Positions 1,290 through 60,155 of a DNA stretch of 64,000 bases are shown here, piece by piece. The position numbers and the translations under genes were made by a program. The notes beneath the pieces are model-generated. The model was not told where the DNA came from. It ran no database searches and was given only the letters and a program-made list of their open reading frames with translations. The number at the start of each line of letters is the position of its first letter. The stretch's first letter is position 1. This DNA comes from Chrysemys picta bellii (Eukaryota): contig NC_088793.1 of the NCBI RefSeq assembly GCF_011386835.1, forward strand, positions 201,066,001 to 201,130,000, read 5' to 3'.

Positions 1290-1800
1290 GTGGCAGCAAA
1301 TGAAATTGATTGATTGTAGACAAGTGTGAGTTAGTGTATATTAGAGAGAAGAGTTTGAACTCATCAATCTCATTAACAGTCAAAACATTAACCGTAGTGC
1401 CTCAGGACAGGCACCTTGGTGCTACTGTGGACAGCTCAGTAGAACTAGTTGCTCCATGGAAAGCAGCAATCAAAGAAGATTACAAAGATATTAGGGTATA
1501 GTAAGAAAGGGATAGAGAAGATTCCTGAAAATATTACAATGACATCATATTAATTGATGGCACTCCCTCAGCTGGGAGGTCCTCTGCTCGTTATCTCCTT
1601 TCAACAAGATACGGTAGAAAGAGGGTTGAAGTTGGACATAACAGACCTTGTCCTGGCTCGGTGCACAGGCTTGAATCTTCCCTACATTCTGTACCACATG
1701 GGCTTTGGCCAGTTGAGCGGTACAAGAAGACCAAGACATTTGGAGAGAGATTAAAAAGATTTTTGGCTATTTGGGTTGGAGGGAAGATGGTTAAGTGGGG
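1290..1800 (+). mobile_element. Old CR1 LINE ORF2 fragment
   Basis: The ORF at 1310-1501 (VDKCELVYI...QDRHLGATVDSS) resembles the CR1 FNxxKCKVMH...ERDLGVxVD region. Downstream FGERLKRFL resembles CR1 YEERLKRLGL. Heavily frameshifted. Confidence 0.6.
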
Positions 1801-2413
1801 AGCTCATAGCGATGTACCAACTAATGAATGTTGTGCTCCAGGGAGTCTTGCCTGGTGTAATAGCACCTAGGAGGCTATTATTATCTGGTATAAGTTAGGA
1901 TAGCCTCACAGTTGCTCTAACCTATGCCTGAGGCCAAACTGGCCTCTGGTAGCCCAAGGAATTAGGGGTACACAAAGGTGTCAGACACCTTTACACCTCA
2001 CCCCCCACACATACTTAGGCTTTGCACAAGATCAGAGAATTGGGCTCAGCATATATAGGCACTGATTCAGTAAAGCACTTCAGCACATTAACATTAAGCA
2101 AGTGCTTTGCTAAATCAAGACCAGTAGTACGTCTGATCTAAGGAGCTCAAAGAGCAGTGGGAGTGATTTCAATGGGAGTTTTCCATTAGCTTTAATTGGA
2201 GTTGGATTGGACCTTTAACGATCATTTATTTTCAAAACATTCCTGTGCAAATATTCCTTCCTCTTTCAAACTTGGCAAAAATGTTTCTACTTGGGTGTCC
2301 AGGCAATTCTGGAAAACAGGTCACACCTTTAGATAACGAAGACCAGATCTACATTAGAATCTTTTATGGGTATAGTAATGTTGGTTAGGCTGTTGGTGTG
2401 ATTACTTTTTAAT

Positions 2414-3512
2414 ATATGCAGTGTTGTTGTAGCCGTGCCGGTCCCAGGATATTAGAGAGACAAAGTGGGTGAGGTAATATCTTTTATTGGACCAATTTCT
2501 GTTTTGTGAGAGAGACGAGCTTACACAGAGCTCGTCAGGTCTGGAAAAGGTACTCAGAGGGTCACAGCTAAATACAAGGTGGACCAGATTGTTTAGCATA
2601 AGTAGTTAACATGTATTTCTAGGGATTATTCAAGGTGAAGCGGCTCATTAACACCCCTCTACTCATAGGTGGGAAAGAACAAAATTTTTTTTTCCTGAAC
2701 CCGCCCTCTTCTGGCCTTCAAACAAACCCCCAACCTCTCAAAGCTCATCATCAGAAGCAAGCTCCCCACACATCAGGACACCAACTCAAAGCGGCACCAG
2801 ACCCTGCCAAAACAGATGCAAAACCTGCAGATGTACCTTCACTGCTACAATGATCAACACTCCCCTCCCCCGCCATACACTTTTCAAAATCCCTGGGTCC
2901 TATAAATGCCTGTCACAACATGTGGTGTGCCTCATCCAGTGCCCTAAATGCCCCAATCACACTTACTGTGTGCAACCACACAAGCACTACTCTCTTGAAT
3001 GAACTTACACAGGAAAATGATTAAAAAAAAAAAAACAAAAAAAAACAAAACACCCTATCACCTGGGGGTGAACACTTTTCACAAAGTGATCACTCTCTCT
3101 CTGACCTGTCAGTCCTCCTCCTCACAGGAAACTTGAGCAACACTTTCAATGGCAGCTTAAATTCATAGCTCTGCTAGACACTTAAAAATCATGGACTGAC
3201 ACTGGATTTATCGCTTATTACAACAATCTATAACCCATAAAAACCTCGTGCCCCTCCCCCAGCTGCCTTTCCCTCCCCTTCCTTTCCCACCTATAGCTGG
3301 AGGGGTGTTAATGGGCCACTTCCCCTTAAATGGGCCCTTGAAATACATGTTATCTACTTAAGCTAAACTATCTCTTCCACCTTGTATTTAGCTGTGACAC
3401 TGCATTTCCCAGACCTGAAGAAGAGCTCTGTGTCAGTTCGAAAGCTTGTGTCTCTCTCATCAACAGAGGTTGGTCCAGGGTAAGATATTATCTCACGCAG
3501 CTTGTCTCTCTA
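2414..3512. mobile_element. Penelope-like element (family B): minus-strand terminal repeat (2414-~2670) plus inverted plus-strand body with GIY-YIG endonuclease remnant and terminal repeat
   Basis: 2700-3235 (+), with frameshifts, gives PCQNRCKTC...GSYKCLSQHVVCLIQCPKCP...GEHFSQSDHSLSDLSVL...LKFIALLDT, the PLE GIY-YIG C-terminal region. 3330-3512 is the reverse complement of 2453-2650. Confidence 0.85.
3411..3451 (+). ncRNA. Minimal type I hammerhead-ribozyme motif in Penelope terminal repeat (family B; stem I disrupted by a GT insertion)
   Basis: AGAC-CTGAAGA-A-GAGC(TCTGTGTCA)GTTC-GAAA-GC-TT-GT[GT]CT: core boxes, a 4-bp stem II and a palindromic AAGCTT at stem III. Confidence 0.6.
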
Positions 3513-3544
3513 TTTTTAATGACTGTTTTATATTGCTAAAAACC

Positions 3545-26669: not shown

Positions 26670-26773
26670 TAGAGGGACCAGACAGCAAGTGTGAAAAATC
26701 GGGACAACGGGTGGGGGGTAATAGGAGCCTATATAAGAAAAAGACTCAAAAATTGGGACATATGGTCACCCTA
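26670..26773. mobile_element. hAT-Blackjack-like MITE (TAGGGTGACC terminus)
   Basis: TAGAGGGACCAG...TGGTCACCCTA. TSD GGGGACCA/GGGGAGCA (7/8). Confidence 0.8.
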
Positions 26774-54000: not shown

Positions 54001-55349
54001 AGCTATTGATGTGCTGAGGGGAAATAACCACATTGAACTAAATAAACTGGACTATGTGGATGACAGTGGGATTCTTACCAAATCCTGTGGTGTACAAGAA
54101 CCATGCTGAGCTCGGTGGCATGAGTCTTGGTTAATGCTGCAACAGGAGTAGTGTGTGACTTCAGCTGTTGGGACTCCAATGTGCCTTGGGGTCAGAATAC
54201 ATCCCTGCTTCCCCCTTAAGGGGGATGTCGTAATTTACTGATGGCCTGTACCAGCAGTGAATCACACCACCTCTTAGATCCATTCAGCAATTCTGATCAG
54301 CAAGTGGGAGGAGAGGGGGAGGAATGGGGAACAAAGGTTCCACCCATTTCTTGCCTATTCCACTTCCTCTTGCCCCCCCACCATACACCTTCCCCAGGAG
54401 GGGAATAGACCTGTTTATTGCTATGCACCTGAATCAAAACTCCCAGTAGGGATGGCTTTGCAATCTATCTAGCCCATGGTGTGCAGGTCGTACACTGCAG
54501 CTAATGTTAATACTCAGATTTTTTTTCTTTAAATTTGGAAGAGAATAGGAAAAAATATGAATTTTCCCACAATACCATCTTCTTGGGCCAATCCAAAATA
54601 GGCACTTACTTGTTCCTCCTTGTGTTAAACTGGAAAGTAGAGAAGGACTTCAGGCTTTATCTTTCAAGGTGCTGCGCATCCTCATTCTCACTGGCTTCCG
54701 TGTATAGCTTTTTCCCCCCTGCTGGGTCCAAATAAAAATGAGGCTAGACTTTAGAGAACAAAAAAGCTTTGTGAAATAATCACAATATAACCCCAAGCAT
54801 TTGGAACTCACTTGGTGTCAGCTTTGGTTATAAACTTTAAACTCTGACCAAGTGCAAGCCCAGCTTTGTTAAATTCACGAGTCTTTCTAGTGAATGTGGA
54901 GCTGGCCTGTGAGGTACTACTTTGAAATCAGGCAAAATCCACTGTCACAAAGAGAAAATTAGCCACTTAATGAAAATGTTCCTAACTAGTGTTATTTACA
55001 ATAGCTTAATTCTAGGGCTGTCAGACAATTAAAACAATTAATCACGATTAATAATAGAATACCATTTATATAAATATTTTGGATGTTTTCCACATTTTCA
55101 AATATATTGATTTCAATTACAACACAGAATACAAAGTGTGTAGTGCTCACTTTATATTTATTTTTTATTATAAATATTTGCACTATAAAAATAAAAGAAA
55201 TAGTGTTTTTTCAATTCACTTAATACAAGTACTGTAGTGCAATCTTTTTATCATGAAAGTTGAACTTACAAATGTAAACTATTGTACAAAAAAACTGCAT
55301 TCAAAAGTTAAACAATATAAAACTTTAGTGCCTACAAGTCCACTCAGTC

Positions 55350-55930
55350 CCACTTCTTGTTAAGCCAATCACTCAGACAAACAAGTTTGTTTATATTTGC
55401 AGGAGACAATGCTGCCCGCTTCTTGTTTACAATGTCACTTGAAAGTGAGAACAGGCATTCGTATGGCACTGTTGTAGCCAGCGTTACAAGATATTTACAT
55501 GACTGCTGCGCTAAAGATTCTTATCTCTCTTCATGCTTCAACCACCATTCCAAAGGATGTGTGTTCATGTGAATGATGGGTTCTGCTCGATAACGTTCCA
55601 GAGCAGACCAACACATGTTCATTTTCTTCATCTGAGTCAGATGCCACCAGCAGAAGGTTGCTTTTCTTTTTTGGTGGTTGGGGTTCTGTAGTTTCCACAT
55701 TGATGTGTTGCTCTTTTAAGACTTCTGAAAGCATGCTCCACACCTCGTCCCCCTCATATTTTGGAAGGCACTTCAGATTCTTAAATCTTGGGGCATGTGC
55801 TGTAGCTATCTTTAGAAATCTCACATTGGTACCTCCTTTGCGTTTTGTCAAATCTGCAGCGAAAGTGTTCTTAAAACGAACGTGTGCTGGGTCATCATCC
55901 AAGACTGCTATAACAAATAATATATGGCAG
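55350..55930 (-). pseudogene. hAT transposase C-terminal remnant including hATC dimerization domain
   Basis: KIATAHAPRFKNLKCL (ATxLDPR motif), followed in a shifted frame by ERYRAEPII...HPLEWWLKH...KYL..LATTVPYECLFSLSSDIVNKKRAALSPANINKLVCL. Confidence 0.8.
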
Positions 55931-56014
55931 AATGCGGGTAAAACAGAGCAGGAGATATACAATTCTCCCCCAAGAAGTTAAGTCACAAATTTAATTAACA
56001 CATTATTATTTTTT

Positions 56015-56240
56015 TAACAAGTGTCATCAGCATGGAAGCATATCCTCTGGAATGGTGGCCAAAGCATAAGGGGCATACAAATGTTTAGCATATCTGGCAA
56101 GTAAAATCCTTGCAATGCCGTCTACAAAAGTACCATGCAAACATCTGTTCTCACTTTCAGGTGACATTGTAAATAAGAAGTGGGCAGCATTATCTCCCGT
56201 AAATGTCAACAAACGTGTTTCTCTTAGTGATTGGCTACAC
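56015..56240 (+). pseudogene. Second hATC dimerization-domain remnant (right arm)
   Basis: SMEAYPLEWWPKHK...CLAYLASKILAMPSTKVPCKHLFSLSGDIVNKKWAALSPVNVNKRVSLSDWL. Confidence 0.8.
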
Positions 56241-56252
56241 AAGAAGTAAGAC

Positions 56253-56379
56253 TAGGGTGACCAGATGTCCTGATTTTATAGGGACAATCCTGGATTTTTG
56301 GGTCTTTTTCTTATATAGGCTCCGATTTACACCCCACCCCCCCATCCCAATTTTTCACACTTGCTGTCTGGTCACCCTA
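56253..56379. mobile_element. hAT-Blackjack-like MITE nested in the fold-back hAT
   Basis: TIRs TAGGGTGACCAGA...TCTGGTCACCCTA. Perfect TSD AGTAAGAC at 56245-56252 and 56380-56387. Confidence 0.93.
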
Positions 56380-57682
56380 AGTAAGACTGAATGGACTTGT
56401 AGGCTCTAACGTTTTACATTGTTTTGTTTTTGCGTGCATTTATGTAACAAAAAAAATCTATATTTGTAAGTTGTGCTTTCATGATAAAGAGATTGCACTA
56501 TGGTACTTGTATGAGGTAAATTGAAAAATACTATTTCTTTTATCATTTTTACAGTGCAAATATTTGTAATAAAAATAATATAAAGTGAGCACTGTACACT
56601 TTTTATTGTGTTGTAATTGAAATCAGTGTATTTGAAAATGTAGAAAACATCTAACATTTAATACATTTCAATTGGTATTCTATTGTTTAACGGTGCAATT
56701 AAAGCTGATTAATCACGATTAATTTTTTGAGTTAATCGTGTGAGTTAACTGCGATTAATCGACAGCCCAACTTAATTCATCAAACAAGCAAAGGTAAATA
56801 AAAACAATGGGCAAAGATTTTGTTAATTACACTCACATAATAAGCCTACAGTGTGTAAAAATACTGTACAGAGGTTGCAAATGGATTGAGGAGCAGTTTC
56901 TCTAATACCCTGCATCTTGTGTTTGGGAAAAGGACTGTCTCTTACTATGTGTCCCCATCTCAACTGGGGCCTTTAGATGCAATAAGAATAATCATACCGG
57001 CTGAGGCAAAGCTGAAAATAATTGTACCTGGATAATGATCAATGAAATAATTAGAAACTGTTCTGTGTTACAAAGAAATCAGTGGGGGTCGAGAGATTAG
57101 CTGCAACGCCAAGACCTAACAAAACCGAAGTAATCTAGAATGAAAATCGTATCTAAATTTGTTATTGCCACGGTTTAAAATGTTTTCTCACTGTTAAACT
57201 TTGGAGTTGGTGGTCGAACTGCATCCTGTTGCTAGCACCTGGATTCAAGCAGAGAAAATCCAATCCCTGGCATCAAAAAGCTAACACACTCATCAAAGTG
57301 CCAGAGACAAATTGAATGGAAAGCCTTCTATGCCAGGGCACTAGAAATTAGGTTAATTGCAACACAGAAATGACGGGGGAAAGGGGAGGCTGAGTATGTT
57401 ATACTTCTGCATAACACTACATACCTTGATAGTATAACAAGAAAGTTAGCCTGAAATGAAAACGCCAGACAAACATACACAAAAAGTGTTTCTAATACAT
57501 CCTGCTTTCCCGGGAGTTAGCCTGACTTTGGGATTAATCTGTGCCCTGGTTTACAGGACTATAGTTGCATACAGAATAAGTAATATGGTAAATGCAATAG
57601 GATGAGTGTAGAGATAACACAGGCCCAGCACACTGGGGTGAGGGTAAATCAAATTCTGTCTTTATTTCCTCTTTACATAGAC

Positions 57683-58990: not shown

Positions 58991-60040
58991 AACGCTAAAC
59001 TTGGAGATGTGGGGGGAGTTGTTCAAGCTGATCAAACTGTTTGTAACCAATTTTCAATTGATTTACTGAACACATTTATTTCATTACGAAGTGATGACTT
59101 GCTATTTATATTGTATGGGAACCAATTTCAGTACATGGGTGATTCATCAACTTTTTACCTTGGGTATTTGCTATGCCCAGTCGAAGTTGTGTAAAATGGA
59201 AGAAGGTTGGTAGAAGTACACAGCAGAAAATAGCCGAGAGGCTGCAGACCAGAAAGACCTTAAACGCTTTTGGGATCAATTTAAAACTATTTTTGGTCCC
59301 GTAACTCATGGTAGCGTTCCCATCCATAGTGCAGATGGCAGTATACTATACACAGGCAAGAAAGCATCATCAATCACTGGGCTGAACACTTTAACAGTCT
59401 ACTCAATTGTCCATCTGCAATTTTGGAGGCTGATATTGGCAGTATAACACAATTCCTGATGCACAAAGAACTCACTAAGCTGCCAAGTATTATCGAGATA
59501 GAAGCCTCCATCAAACAGTTGTCACAAGGGAAGGCACCTGGCTTAGATGGAATACTTCCAGAAGTCTATAAGTGTTGTAGTTATCACATCTTTTGAATGT
59601 TCACATGGCTTTTCAACCTCATCTGGGATCAGTATACCATGCCTCAAGACTTCAAGGATCCCTCAGTTGTCCATATATACAAATGCAAAGGTGATCCAGC
59701 AGTCTGCAACAACCATTGGAAAGAAGTGAGGTACCACATCGCTGGGAAGATTTTGGTGCATGTCTTCCTCAATAGACTCTCCACCGTGATCGATAATAGC
59801 ATTTCAGAAAGTCTGTATAGCTTTTGCATGAGATGTGGAACAGCGGACATGATTTCTGCTGCTTGTCAAATACAGGAAATGTGCTGGGAACAAAATCGTG
59901 ATCTCTATATGGTATTTGTAGACCTGAAGAAGATCTTCAAGGCTGTTAGTGGCAAGGATATCTGGCAGATCTTGCAAAAAAGGTTGCGTACTCACATAAT
60001 TTCGTCACCATCAATGTGCTTAATCCATGCTGGCTAGAGT

Positions 60041-60155
60041 TAGGGTGACCAGATAGCAAGTGTGAAAAATTGGGACGGGGTGGGGGATAATAGGCGCCTA
60101 TATAAAACAAAGCCCCAAATATTGGGGACTGTCCCTATAAAATCGGGACACACTA
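60041..60155. mobile_element. hAT-Blackjack-like MITE nested in RTE; right TIR partly deleted
   Basis: Left TIR TAGGGTGACCAGA. Perfect TSD GCTAGAGT at 60033-60040 and 60156-60163. Confidence 0.88.

What the first reader, a model, noticed from the sequence alone, without database searches (positions are those of the whole stretch)
55013..56770. Fold-back hAT made of two right ends that transposed as a unit, a possible hairpin silencing trigger
The left arm (55013-~55585) and right arm (~56015-56770, minus the nested MITE) are inverted copies of the same transposon 3' end, each encoding an hATC dimerization domain. They are similar but not identical: about 12 mismatches in a 91-nt block compared by eye, and different numbers of ATTAATC subterminal motifs. 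There is no 5' end, yet a perfect 8-bp TSD (CTTAATTC) brackets the whole 1,758 bp, so the two-right-end form appears to have been mobilised. hAT transposases usually need asymmetric left and right subterminal sites, so this is mechanistically notable. Read-through transcription would give ~570 bp of imperfect dsRNA covering transposase coding sequence, analogous to maize Mu killer (inference).
Basis: partly seen in the sequence, partly recalled or inferred. Interest (0 to 1): 0.72.

Follow-up and report, generated by a model that had tools for sequence, protein, structure and literature searches.

The report
Fold-back hAT transposon, hugely multicopy
This is one old, decayed copy of a turtle "jumping gene" family whose founder replaced its front half with a mirror copy of its own tail and then spread to roughly ten thousand or more copies; nothing shows that it silences anything.

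Summary
Element 55013-56770 has hAT-type termini (TAGGGCTGTC...GACAGCCCAA) and a perfect 8-bp duplication, CTTAATTC. Its two inverted arms (55013-55576 and 56024-56770) are 80.6% identical. Each arm carries a hAT dimerisation-domain remnant, a stop codon and a 3' untranslated tail. A 127-bp hAT MITE is nested in the right arm.

The central segment continues the left arm's reading frame on the minus strand. So the structure is the last ~220 codons of a ZBED1-like hAT transposase plus its 3' end, joined to an inverted copy of that same 3' end.

It is not a one-off. Contigs from four organisms put 41,000-78,000 pieces on the element, with summed depth about 10^4 times that of the flanks. Paralogous contigs cross the central junction. 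About 300 contigs per run end at the right terminus with unrelated flanks. Fragments of the same coding segment occur in many cryptodiran turtles, including Pelodiscus. Longer remnants with a BED finger survive in Chelydra, Gopherus and Pelodiscus.

The "two right ends moved as a unit" reading is therefore strongly supported, as a family trait. The silencing idea is untested, and the family's own success argues against it. A hAT inverted-repeat silencer (maize Ack1) is already described. No DNA of other copies could be fetched, so the parent's 5' end was not examined.

The parts
55005..55012 (.). Left copy of the 8-bp target-site duplication, CTTAATTC.
   Evidence: Read directly; identical to 56771-56778.
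55013..55576 (-). Left arm, the genuine 3' end of the truncated transposase gene. It holds the TIR TAGGGCTGTC (55013-55022), GATTAATC-type subterminal motifs, a 331-bp 3' untranslated tail (55013-55343), the stop codon (55344-55346) and the dimerisation-domain remnant.
   Evidence: Pfam hATC match on 55347-55520 minus strand, E 3.2e-5.
55577..56023 (-). Central unique segment: a decayed transposase coding region directly upstream of the dimerisation domain. It corresponds to about residues 357-505 of a 580-aa fish ZBED1-like hAT transposase. It contains the 143-codon ORF 55531-55962 and a cryptic splice acceptor near 55908-55910.
   Evidence: ORF. 43% identity to P0043 residues 394-572. Alignment with the longer turtle remnants P0031, P0174 and P0175 shows homology starting at about CRFV, near window position 56000.
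56024..56252 (+). Right arm, inner part: an inverted duplicate of the 3' end. It holds the dimerisation-domain remnant (56070-56246) and the stop codon (56247-56249). The fold-back junction lies at 56023/56024.
   Evidence: Pfam hATC match, E 2.7e-7. Paralogous contigs bridge the junction (table 8, records 6, 7, 13 and 23).
56253..56379 (.). Nested 127-bp hAT-type MITE with TIR TAGGGTGACCAGATG... and its own duplication AGTAAGAC (56245-56252 and 56380-56387). It is a later insertion and not part of the fold-back family.
   Evidence: About 300-430 contigs per run break exactly at 56253 and 56379 (table 7). Related copies lie at 26670-26753 and 60040-60150.
56388..56770 (+). Right arm, outer part: the 3' untranslated tail homologue, four GATTAATC-type motifs, and the TIR ...GACAGCCCAA. 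The family majority reads ...CCCTA, so this copy has T>A at 56769.
   Evidence: The loose-end consensus begins 'TA' after 56768 in 274-339 contigs per run (table 7).
56771..56778 (.). Right copy of the 8-bp target-site duplication, CTTAATTC.

Best explanation
The stretch is one ancient, dead copy of a very abundant non-autonomous hAT family of cryptodiran turtles. The family belongs to the Ac/ZBED1-like clade.

In the family's founder, everything 5' of about codon 357 of the transposase gene was replaced by an inverted copy of the element's own 3' end. That copy is about 620 bp long. It holds the last ~75 codons with the dimerisation domain, the stop codon, the 3' untranslated tail, the palindromic GATTAATC subterminal motifs and the TIR. 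This gave an element of about 1.6 kb with terminal inverted repeats of about 570-620 bp.

Because both ends carry the same TIR and subterminal motifs, a full-length transposase supplied in trans could cut and paste the element, making 8-bp duplications. It multiplied to roughly 10^4 or more copies.

This copy inserted at CTTAATTC before the four sampled organisms diverged. It later received a hAT MITE in its right arm and has since accumulated stop codons, frameshifts and about 10% substitutions per arm.

Shown here: the anatomy, the multicopy junction, the shared terminus with many different flanks, the taxonomic spread, and the existence of longer remnants of the autonomous type.

Inferred: the founder arose in a single event. 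One route is template switching between the inverted TIRs during gap repair after excision. Another is an alternative-transposition or re-replication event of the kind documented for maize Ac. Mobilisation in trans is also inferred.
For: - Anatomy.
- The central segment is continuous in frame with the left arm, and aligns to residues 394-572 of a 580-aa BED-finger hAT transposase.
- Homology to the longer turtle remnants reaches about CRFV, near position 56000. That is within about 23 bp of the arm boundary.
- Family size: 41,706-78,501 contig pieces per run lie on the element at 80% likeness or more. Summed depth is about 1.5e5 to 1e6, against 5-40 in the flanks. Depth stays level across the junction bins.
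- Junction in other copies: fully aligned paralogous contigs at about 80-89% identity span 56023/56024 in three organisms (records 6, 7, 13, 23).
- No highly ranked cluster of loose ends sits at the junction. In contrast, 274-339 contigs per run end at 56768 with unrelated AT-rich flanks.
- Orthologous flank contigs enter the left end of the element in all four organisms. They enter the right end in the three whose listed pieces reach it (table 8).
- The word search found 21 turtle-only fragments of the same C-terminal segment. The all-protein search gave 36 hits at E <= 1e-30. All matches above about 150 bits cover only the C-terminal ~200 residues.
- The part upstream of the junction finds only three named or high-identity turtle remnants, from Gopherus, Chelydra and Pelodiscus.
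- Private-mutation test: at 16 of 21 sites the family letter restores arm pairing.
Against: - Scans of metagenome, genome and viral contigs were blank. So independent duplications, a family consensus and the parent's 5' end were not examined.
- No Logan contig spans the whole element, so the continuity of this locus rests on the assembly.
- Summed contig depth is not a true copy number.
- Contigs from either arm of other copies can land on either arm here (1,712-3,540 pieces per run fit two places). This could inflate the apparent similarity of the consensus arms.
- The right end's outermost ~86 bp differ from the left end's 40 bp by two gaps. The right end may therefore keep some true 5'-end sequence.
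Confidence: 0.85

Rival explanations
1. The autonomous parent itself had long, near-symmetric termini of about 600 bp that included the end of its reading frame. On this view the family is an ordinary internal-deletion derivative rather than a fold-back rearrangement.
For: The parent's 5' end was never seen, so this cannot be excluded directly. Long-TIR DNA transposons do exist, for example Galileo (papers listed).
Against: Arm homology ends at 56024, and transposase coding homology resumes within about 23 bp of that point. A deletion would therefore need one breakpoint exactly at the inner edge of the long repeat. An autonomous element with an antisense copy of its own last exon ahead of its gene would make a hairpin with its own transcript. 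The longer turtle remnants P0031 and P0174 read straight through the breakpoint into normal upstream transposase sequence, and P0175 supplies that upstream sequence up to the breakpoint.
Confidence: 0.08
2. It is a one-off composite. Two independently inserted or nested truncated hAT copies lie head to head, and the matching 8-bp flanks are coincidental.
For: The arms are only ~80% identical, which could suggest two different source copies.
Against: An exact 8-bp match abutting both termini has a chance of about 1.5e-5. The junction is present in paralogous contigs of three organisms, and depth stays level across it. Most of the best-supported arm mismatches are private decay.
Confidence: 0.01
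3. The element, or the family, acts as a hairpin silencing trigger in the manner of Mu killer or Ac killer. Read-through transcripts would fold into dsRNA that is processed into small RNAs against the transposase.
For: A transcript of either strand is predicted to fold arm on arm. The MFE is -737 kcal/mol against -384 for shuffles (z about -40), with 472 arm-to-arm pairs. The arms cover transposase coding sequence. Such loci are real for a hAT element in maize (Ack1).
Against: No expression or small-RNA data exist for this locus, and the RNA runs offered held at most 0.09 of the sampled words. The longest perfect duplex in this copy is 18 bp. The fold-back form kept transposing to very high copy number, so early copies did not shut off the transposase. 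From own knowledge, amniotes lack RNA-dependent RNA polymerase and rely mainly on piRNAs. No Rfam family matched at threshold. No intact turtle transposase was found that would still need silencing.
Confidence: 0.05

Closest known systems
Rearranged Ds-type derivatives of maize Ac, formed by abortive gap repair or template switching
   Same: A non-autonomous hAT derivative that keeps the termini, lacks most of the transposase gene, is mobilised in trans and makes an 8-bp duplication. An inverted duplication arising in a single repair event is the inferred origin.
   Different: Here both ends derive from the 3' end and include about 230 bp of coding sequence. The derivative became a family of roughly 10^4 copies in a vertebrate. 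For Ac, the 5' and 3' subterminal regions are reported not to be interchangeable (own knowledge: Coupland et al. 1989; not checked here).
Ac killer 1 (Ack1) and related composite insertions in maize, and Mu killer
   Same: An inverted duplication of hAT (or Mutator) sequence covering both subterminal and transcribed regions, and able to form a long hairpin RNA.
   Different: Ack1 and Muk are single loci that do not move. Their dsRNA, siRNAs and heritable silencing have been demonstrated. The turtle element is itself a mobile, highly amplified family, and none of those properties was tested. Its amplification argues against strong silencing.
Long-TIR and fold-back DNA transposons (Galileo of the P superfamily, Drosophila FB elements)
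   Same: Terminal inverted repeats hundreds of bp long, and transposase binding sites within the repeats (papers listed).
   Different: FB and Galileo repeats contain tandem sub-repeats, and none are present here. The superfamily differs: here it is hAT, with an 8-bp duplication and a dimerisation-domain remnant. The repeats here are a duplicated gene end.
hAT MITEs (for example Mar in Drosophila, listed; the human MER1/Charlie-derived MITEs, from own knowledge)
   Same: A high-copy non-autonomous hAT element with near-symmetric ends. Short derivatives of about 265 bp with the same termini exist (joint 55134 to 56627/56629 in all four organisms).
   Different: At about 1.6 kb it is too long to be a MITE, and it retains about 220 recognisable transposase codons plus a second, inverted copy of about 75 of them.

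Membership tests
hAT superfamily transposon | 8-bp target-site duplication | tested here: met
   CTTAATTC at 55005-55012 and 56771-56778.
hAT superfamily transposon | Short TIRs beginning with the YARNG pattern (own knowledge of the hAT consensus) | tested here: met
   TAGGGCTGTC on the left and TTGGGCTGTC (reverse complement) on the right. The family majority restores TAGGG at the right end.
hAT superfamily transposon | Transposase with a C-terminal hAT dimerisation domain | tested here: met
   PF05699 matches in both arms and in family fragments, E 4e-13. The closest full-length relative has zf-BED plus hATC.
Autonomous hAT element | Complete transposase reading frame with BED finger and RNase-H-like catalytic domain | tested here: not met
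   Only about the last 220 codons are present, broken by stops and frameshifts. The N-terminal ~357 residues are absent.
Mu killer / Ac killer type silencing locus | Inverted duplication covering transcribed transposon sequence | tested here: met
   Arms of about 564 bp (left) and 612 bp (right, without the MITE) include about 230 bp of coding sequence. A hairpin is predicted.
Mu killer / Ac killer type silencing locus | Hairpin transcript and derived small RNAs | not testable with these tools
   Only assembled contigs were available. The single read-laying run was used on DNA runs.
Mu killer / Ac killer type silencing locus | Heritable silencing of an active autonomous element | not testable with these tools
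   This needs genetics. No intact turtle transposase was found.
Foldback (FB-like) elements | Long terminal repeats built of tandem sub-repeats | tested here: not met
   Tandem Repeats Finder found nothing in 54900-56900.
MITE | Small size (under about 800 bp) and no coding remnant | tested here: not met
   1,758 bp in all, or 1,623 bp without the nested MITE and its duplicated 8 bp, with recognisable coding remnants.

The most novel reading that the evidence does not exclude
Because each of the thousands of copies is a hairpin of about 570 bp that includes transposase coding sequence, the family as a whole may have been a self-limiting 'killer'. Once enough copies sat in transcribed regions, their dsRNA could have fed piRNA or siRNA production and extinguished the autonomous parent across cryptodiran turtles. 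Today the copies may be a major source of long intronic dsRNA (targets for A-to-I editing) and of new exons through a family-borne splice acceptor.
Probability: 0.1. Interest if true: 0.6.

Novelty: new member of a known kind. Interest (0 to 1): 0.33.

Why it matters
The family is a natural experiment. It shows that in this ZBED1-like hAT lineage, two copies of the 3' end are enough for efficient mobilisation, which is not what is reported for maize Ac. It also gives a clear single-event origin for a long-TIR non-autonomous family. With roughly 10^4 or more copies, it is a sizeable part of turtle genomes, a genome-wide source of long hairpins, and a repeated donor of exons to host gene models.

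For the scan, the main result is deflationary. This locus is an ordinary member of a large and probably already catalogued repeat family, not a special silencing locus. I could not check Repbase or Dfam to confirm the cataloguing.

Tried and rejected
An exact-pattern scan of metagenome contigs was blank. Protein-guided scans of metagenome, genome and viral contigs were also blank. The first attempt failed because the alignment was too loose.
- Looking for other copies inside the window. There are none apart from the nested MITE's relatives.
- Tandem sub-repeats in the arms: none.
- Rfam: only sub-threshold chance-level matches.
- The bacterial-type promoter/terminator scan was uninformative.
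- Literature searches for a description of this turtle family found nothing. The turtle hAT-6_XT paper concerns a different, young, low-copy element. The Anolis DNA-transposon paper mentions no such architecture.
- Earlier scan notes by sequence were blank.
- Gene context for read-through transcription: no convincing exons were seen among the long ORFs, so it is unknown whether the locus lies in a transcribed region.
- Rejected: the two-adjacent-insertions reading and the assembly-artefact reading, both.
Full report
**What is there.** The element runs from 55013 to 56770. It starts TAGGGCTGTC and ends GACAGCCCAA, and is bracketed by a perfect CTTAATTC at 55005-55012 and 56771-56778.

Self-comparison finds two inverted arms, 55013-55576 and 56024-56770. 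A global alignment made after removing the nested MITE gives 462 identities in 573 aligned columns, or 80.6%.

The MITE occupies 56253-56379. It has TIRs TAGGGTGACC.../...GGTCACCCTA and its own 8-bp duplication, AGTAAGAC.

Both arms hit Pfam Dimer_Tnp_hAT. The left piece (55347-55520, minus strand) scores E 3.2e-5. The right piece (56070-56246, plus strand) scores E 2.7e-7. Each is followed by a stop codon and an untranslated tail leading to the TIR.

The subterminal motif GATTAATC is its own reverse complement. It is more frequent at the right end, which is 55 bp longer than the left because of two gaps. No tandem repeats are present.

**The middle is not filler.** On the minus strand, 55531-55962 is a 143-codon open frame. 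After one frameshift it runs into the left arm's dimerisation domain.

Family fragments align at 43% identity to residues 394-572 of a 580-aa wrasse protein that has a BED finger and a hATC domain. Look-alike searches by protein-model features and by predicted structure point to ZBED1-like hAT transposases.

Three longer turtle remnants carry transposase sequence upstream of the junction: Pelodiscus P0031, Gopherus P0174 and Chelydra P0175. P0175 includes the BED finger. Aligned with them, the window's homology begins at about "CRFV", near position 56000. That is within about 23 bp of the arm boundary at 56023/56024.

Read on the minus strand, the structure is: inverted copy of the 3' end (about 620 bp), then transposase codons ~357 to the end, then the 3' untranslated tail and TIR.

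**It is a family, not an accident.** Logan contigs of four differently labelled organisms were laid on 54700-57100 at 80% likeness or more.
- Between 41,706 and 78,501 contig pieces per run fall on the element.
- Summed word depth is about 1.5e5 to 1e6 inside the element, against 5-40 in the flanks. The tool warns that this is not a copy number. I read it only as an order of magnitude, 10^4 or more.
- Depth does not drop across the junction bins.
- Four listed contigs aligned over nearly their whole length, at about 80-89% identity, span 56023/56024. They have 36-70 nt on the right-arm side and come from three organisms (records 6, 7, 13, 23). They are paralogues, not this locus.
- Between 274 and 339 contigs per run stop at 56768 and continue into unrelated AT-rich sequence beginning "TA". 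The family terminus is therefore ...CCCTA, a perfect TIR, and this copy has T>A at 56769.
- No comparably supported cluster of loose ends sits at the junction.
- Flank contigs with 0-8 differences in 378 bp run into the left end of the element in all four organisms. They run into the right end in the three whose listed pieces reach it. The insertion therefore predates their divergence.

**Protein searches agree.** The central ORF finds 21 proteins, all from turtles: Malaclemys, Mauremys, Caretta, Chelonia, Lepidochelys, Natator, Eretmochelys, Macrochelys, Pangshura and Gopherus.

The all-protein profile search gives 753 hits, 36 of them at E <= 1e-30. Every match above about 150 bits covers only the C-terminal ~200 residues. 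The best full-length proteins are teleost ZBED1-like transposases.

Further named hits add Chelydra and Pelodiscus. The family therefore spans Cryptodira, including softshell turtles.

The segment upstream of the junction finds only three close turtle remnants. These counts are not strictly comparable, but they fit a high-copy truncated family alongside rare remnants of the autonomous type.

**Arm divergence.** At the 21 best-supported arm sites that could be aligned and where this copy differs from nearly all family contigs, the outcome was as follows:
- At 16 sites the family letter restores complementarity with the other arm.
- At 3 sites it breaks an existing match.
- At 2 sites it changes nothing.

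Much of the 19% arm-to-arm difference is therefore post-insertion decay, and the founder's arms were considerably more alike. One caveat applies: contigs can land on either arm, which biases the result in this direction.

From own knowledge of slow turtle substitution rates, about 10% decay per arm implies an age of the order of 100 million years. That is consistent with the taxonomic spread. This dating is inference.

**How it most likely arose and worked.**
- Shown: two 3' ends, a direct fusion at about codon 357, and amplification with a shared terminus and many different flanks.
- Inferred: a single rearrangement created the founder. One route is strand invasion after excision, with a template switch between the inverted TIRs, so that the 5' flank copied the 3' end. 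Another is an alternative-transposition or re-replication event of the kind that built inverted Ac duplications in maize.
- Inferred: a full-length ZBED1-like transposase then mobilised the founder in trans by binding the TIRs and the palindromic GATTAATC motifs.
- Other notes from this scan report fold-back template-switch scars at hAT MITEs elsewhere in this genome. I did not check them.

**The silencing idea.** A transcript of either strand would fold arm on arm. The MFE is -737 against -384 kcal/mol for shuffles, with 472 arm-to-arm pairs. The longest perfect run is only 18 bp.

Inverted-repeat silencers of a hAT element are already documented in maize: Ack1, with 24-nt and 21-22-nt siRNAs. 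Nothing here tests expression or small RNAs.

The family's continued amplification argues that early hairpin copies did not shut off the transposase. No intact turtle transposase was seen that would still need silencing. I rate a silencing role for this copy as very unlikely. A family-level contribution is possible but unsupported.

**Limits.**
- As a result, independent duplications, a family consensus and the parent's 5' end were not examined.
- Repbase and Dfam could not be consulted. Paper searches found no description of the family.

**Verdict.** The two-right-ends mobilisation is confirmed and generalised to a large cryptodiran family. The silencing interpretation is unsupported. This is a new or probably already catalogued member of a known kind, a rearranged long-TIR non-autonomous hAT, and is of moderate interest.

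Noticed in passing
window 55900-55935 (minus strand); proteins P0002, P0009, P0023, P0025, P0022, P0008, P0026: The family carries a cryptic splice acceptor, ttatttgttatag|CAG, with the AG at about 55908-55910 on the minus strand. Many annotated turtle gene models join a host exon to the element exactly at '(A)VSDDDPAHV...'. Examples are CPPED1, SAMD12 and zinc-finger genes. Other models, such as TBC1D12, casein kinase I, HMGN1, RNase T2 and TBCC, also contain family sequence. The family is a recurrent source of predicted alternative exons.
   Followed up: partly
window 56253-56379; also 26670-26753 and 60040-60150: The nested 127-bp hAT MITE (TIR TAGGGTGACCAGATG, duplication AGTAAGAC) belongs to a family with about twice the summed depth of the host element. 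About 300-430 contigs per run break at its exact ends. It gives a sub-threshold Rfam match to mir-584 (21.5 bits against a cut-off of 80, E 0.36), which is probably chance or distant transposon kinship.
   Followed up: partly
window 55134 joined to 56627/56629: Contigs in all four organisms skip 1,492-1,494 bp between the two arms. This indicates short derivatives of about 265 bp, of MITE size, that keep only the two termini of this family (table 5).
   Followed up: no
window 55606 joined to 56023 on opposite strands: One contig in each of three organisms joins 56023 to the reverse complement of 55606. This suggests at least one copy whose inverted arm is about 30 bp longer than here. Either this copy lost ~30 bp at the junction, or gene conversion extended the palindrome in that other copy (table 5).
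   Followed up: no
window 55013-55052 versus 56685-56770: The outermost part of the right end is 55 bp longer than the left (gaps of 32 and 23 bp) and holds more GATTAATC motifs. Two readings are open: private deletions in the left end, or a surviving piece of the parent's true 5' end.
   Followed up: no
window 56887-56967: The right flank shows a small depth peak, 86-462 against about 5-45 around it. This indicates another low-copy repeat just outside the element (table 2).
   Followed up: no
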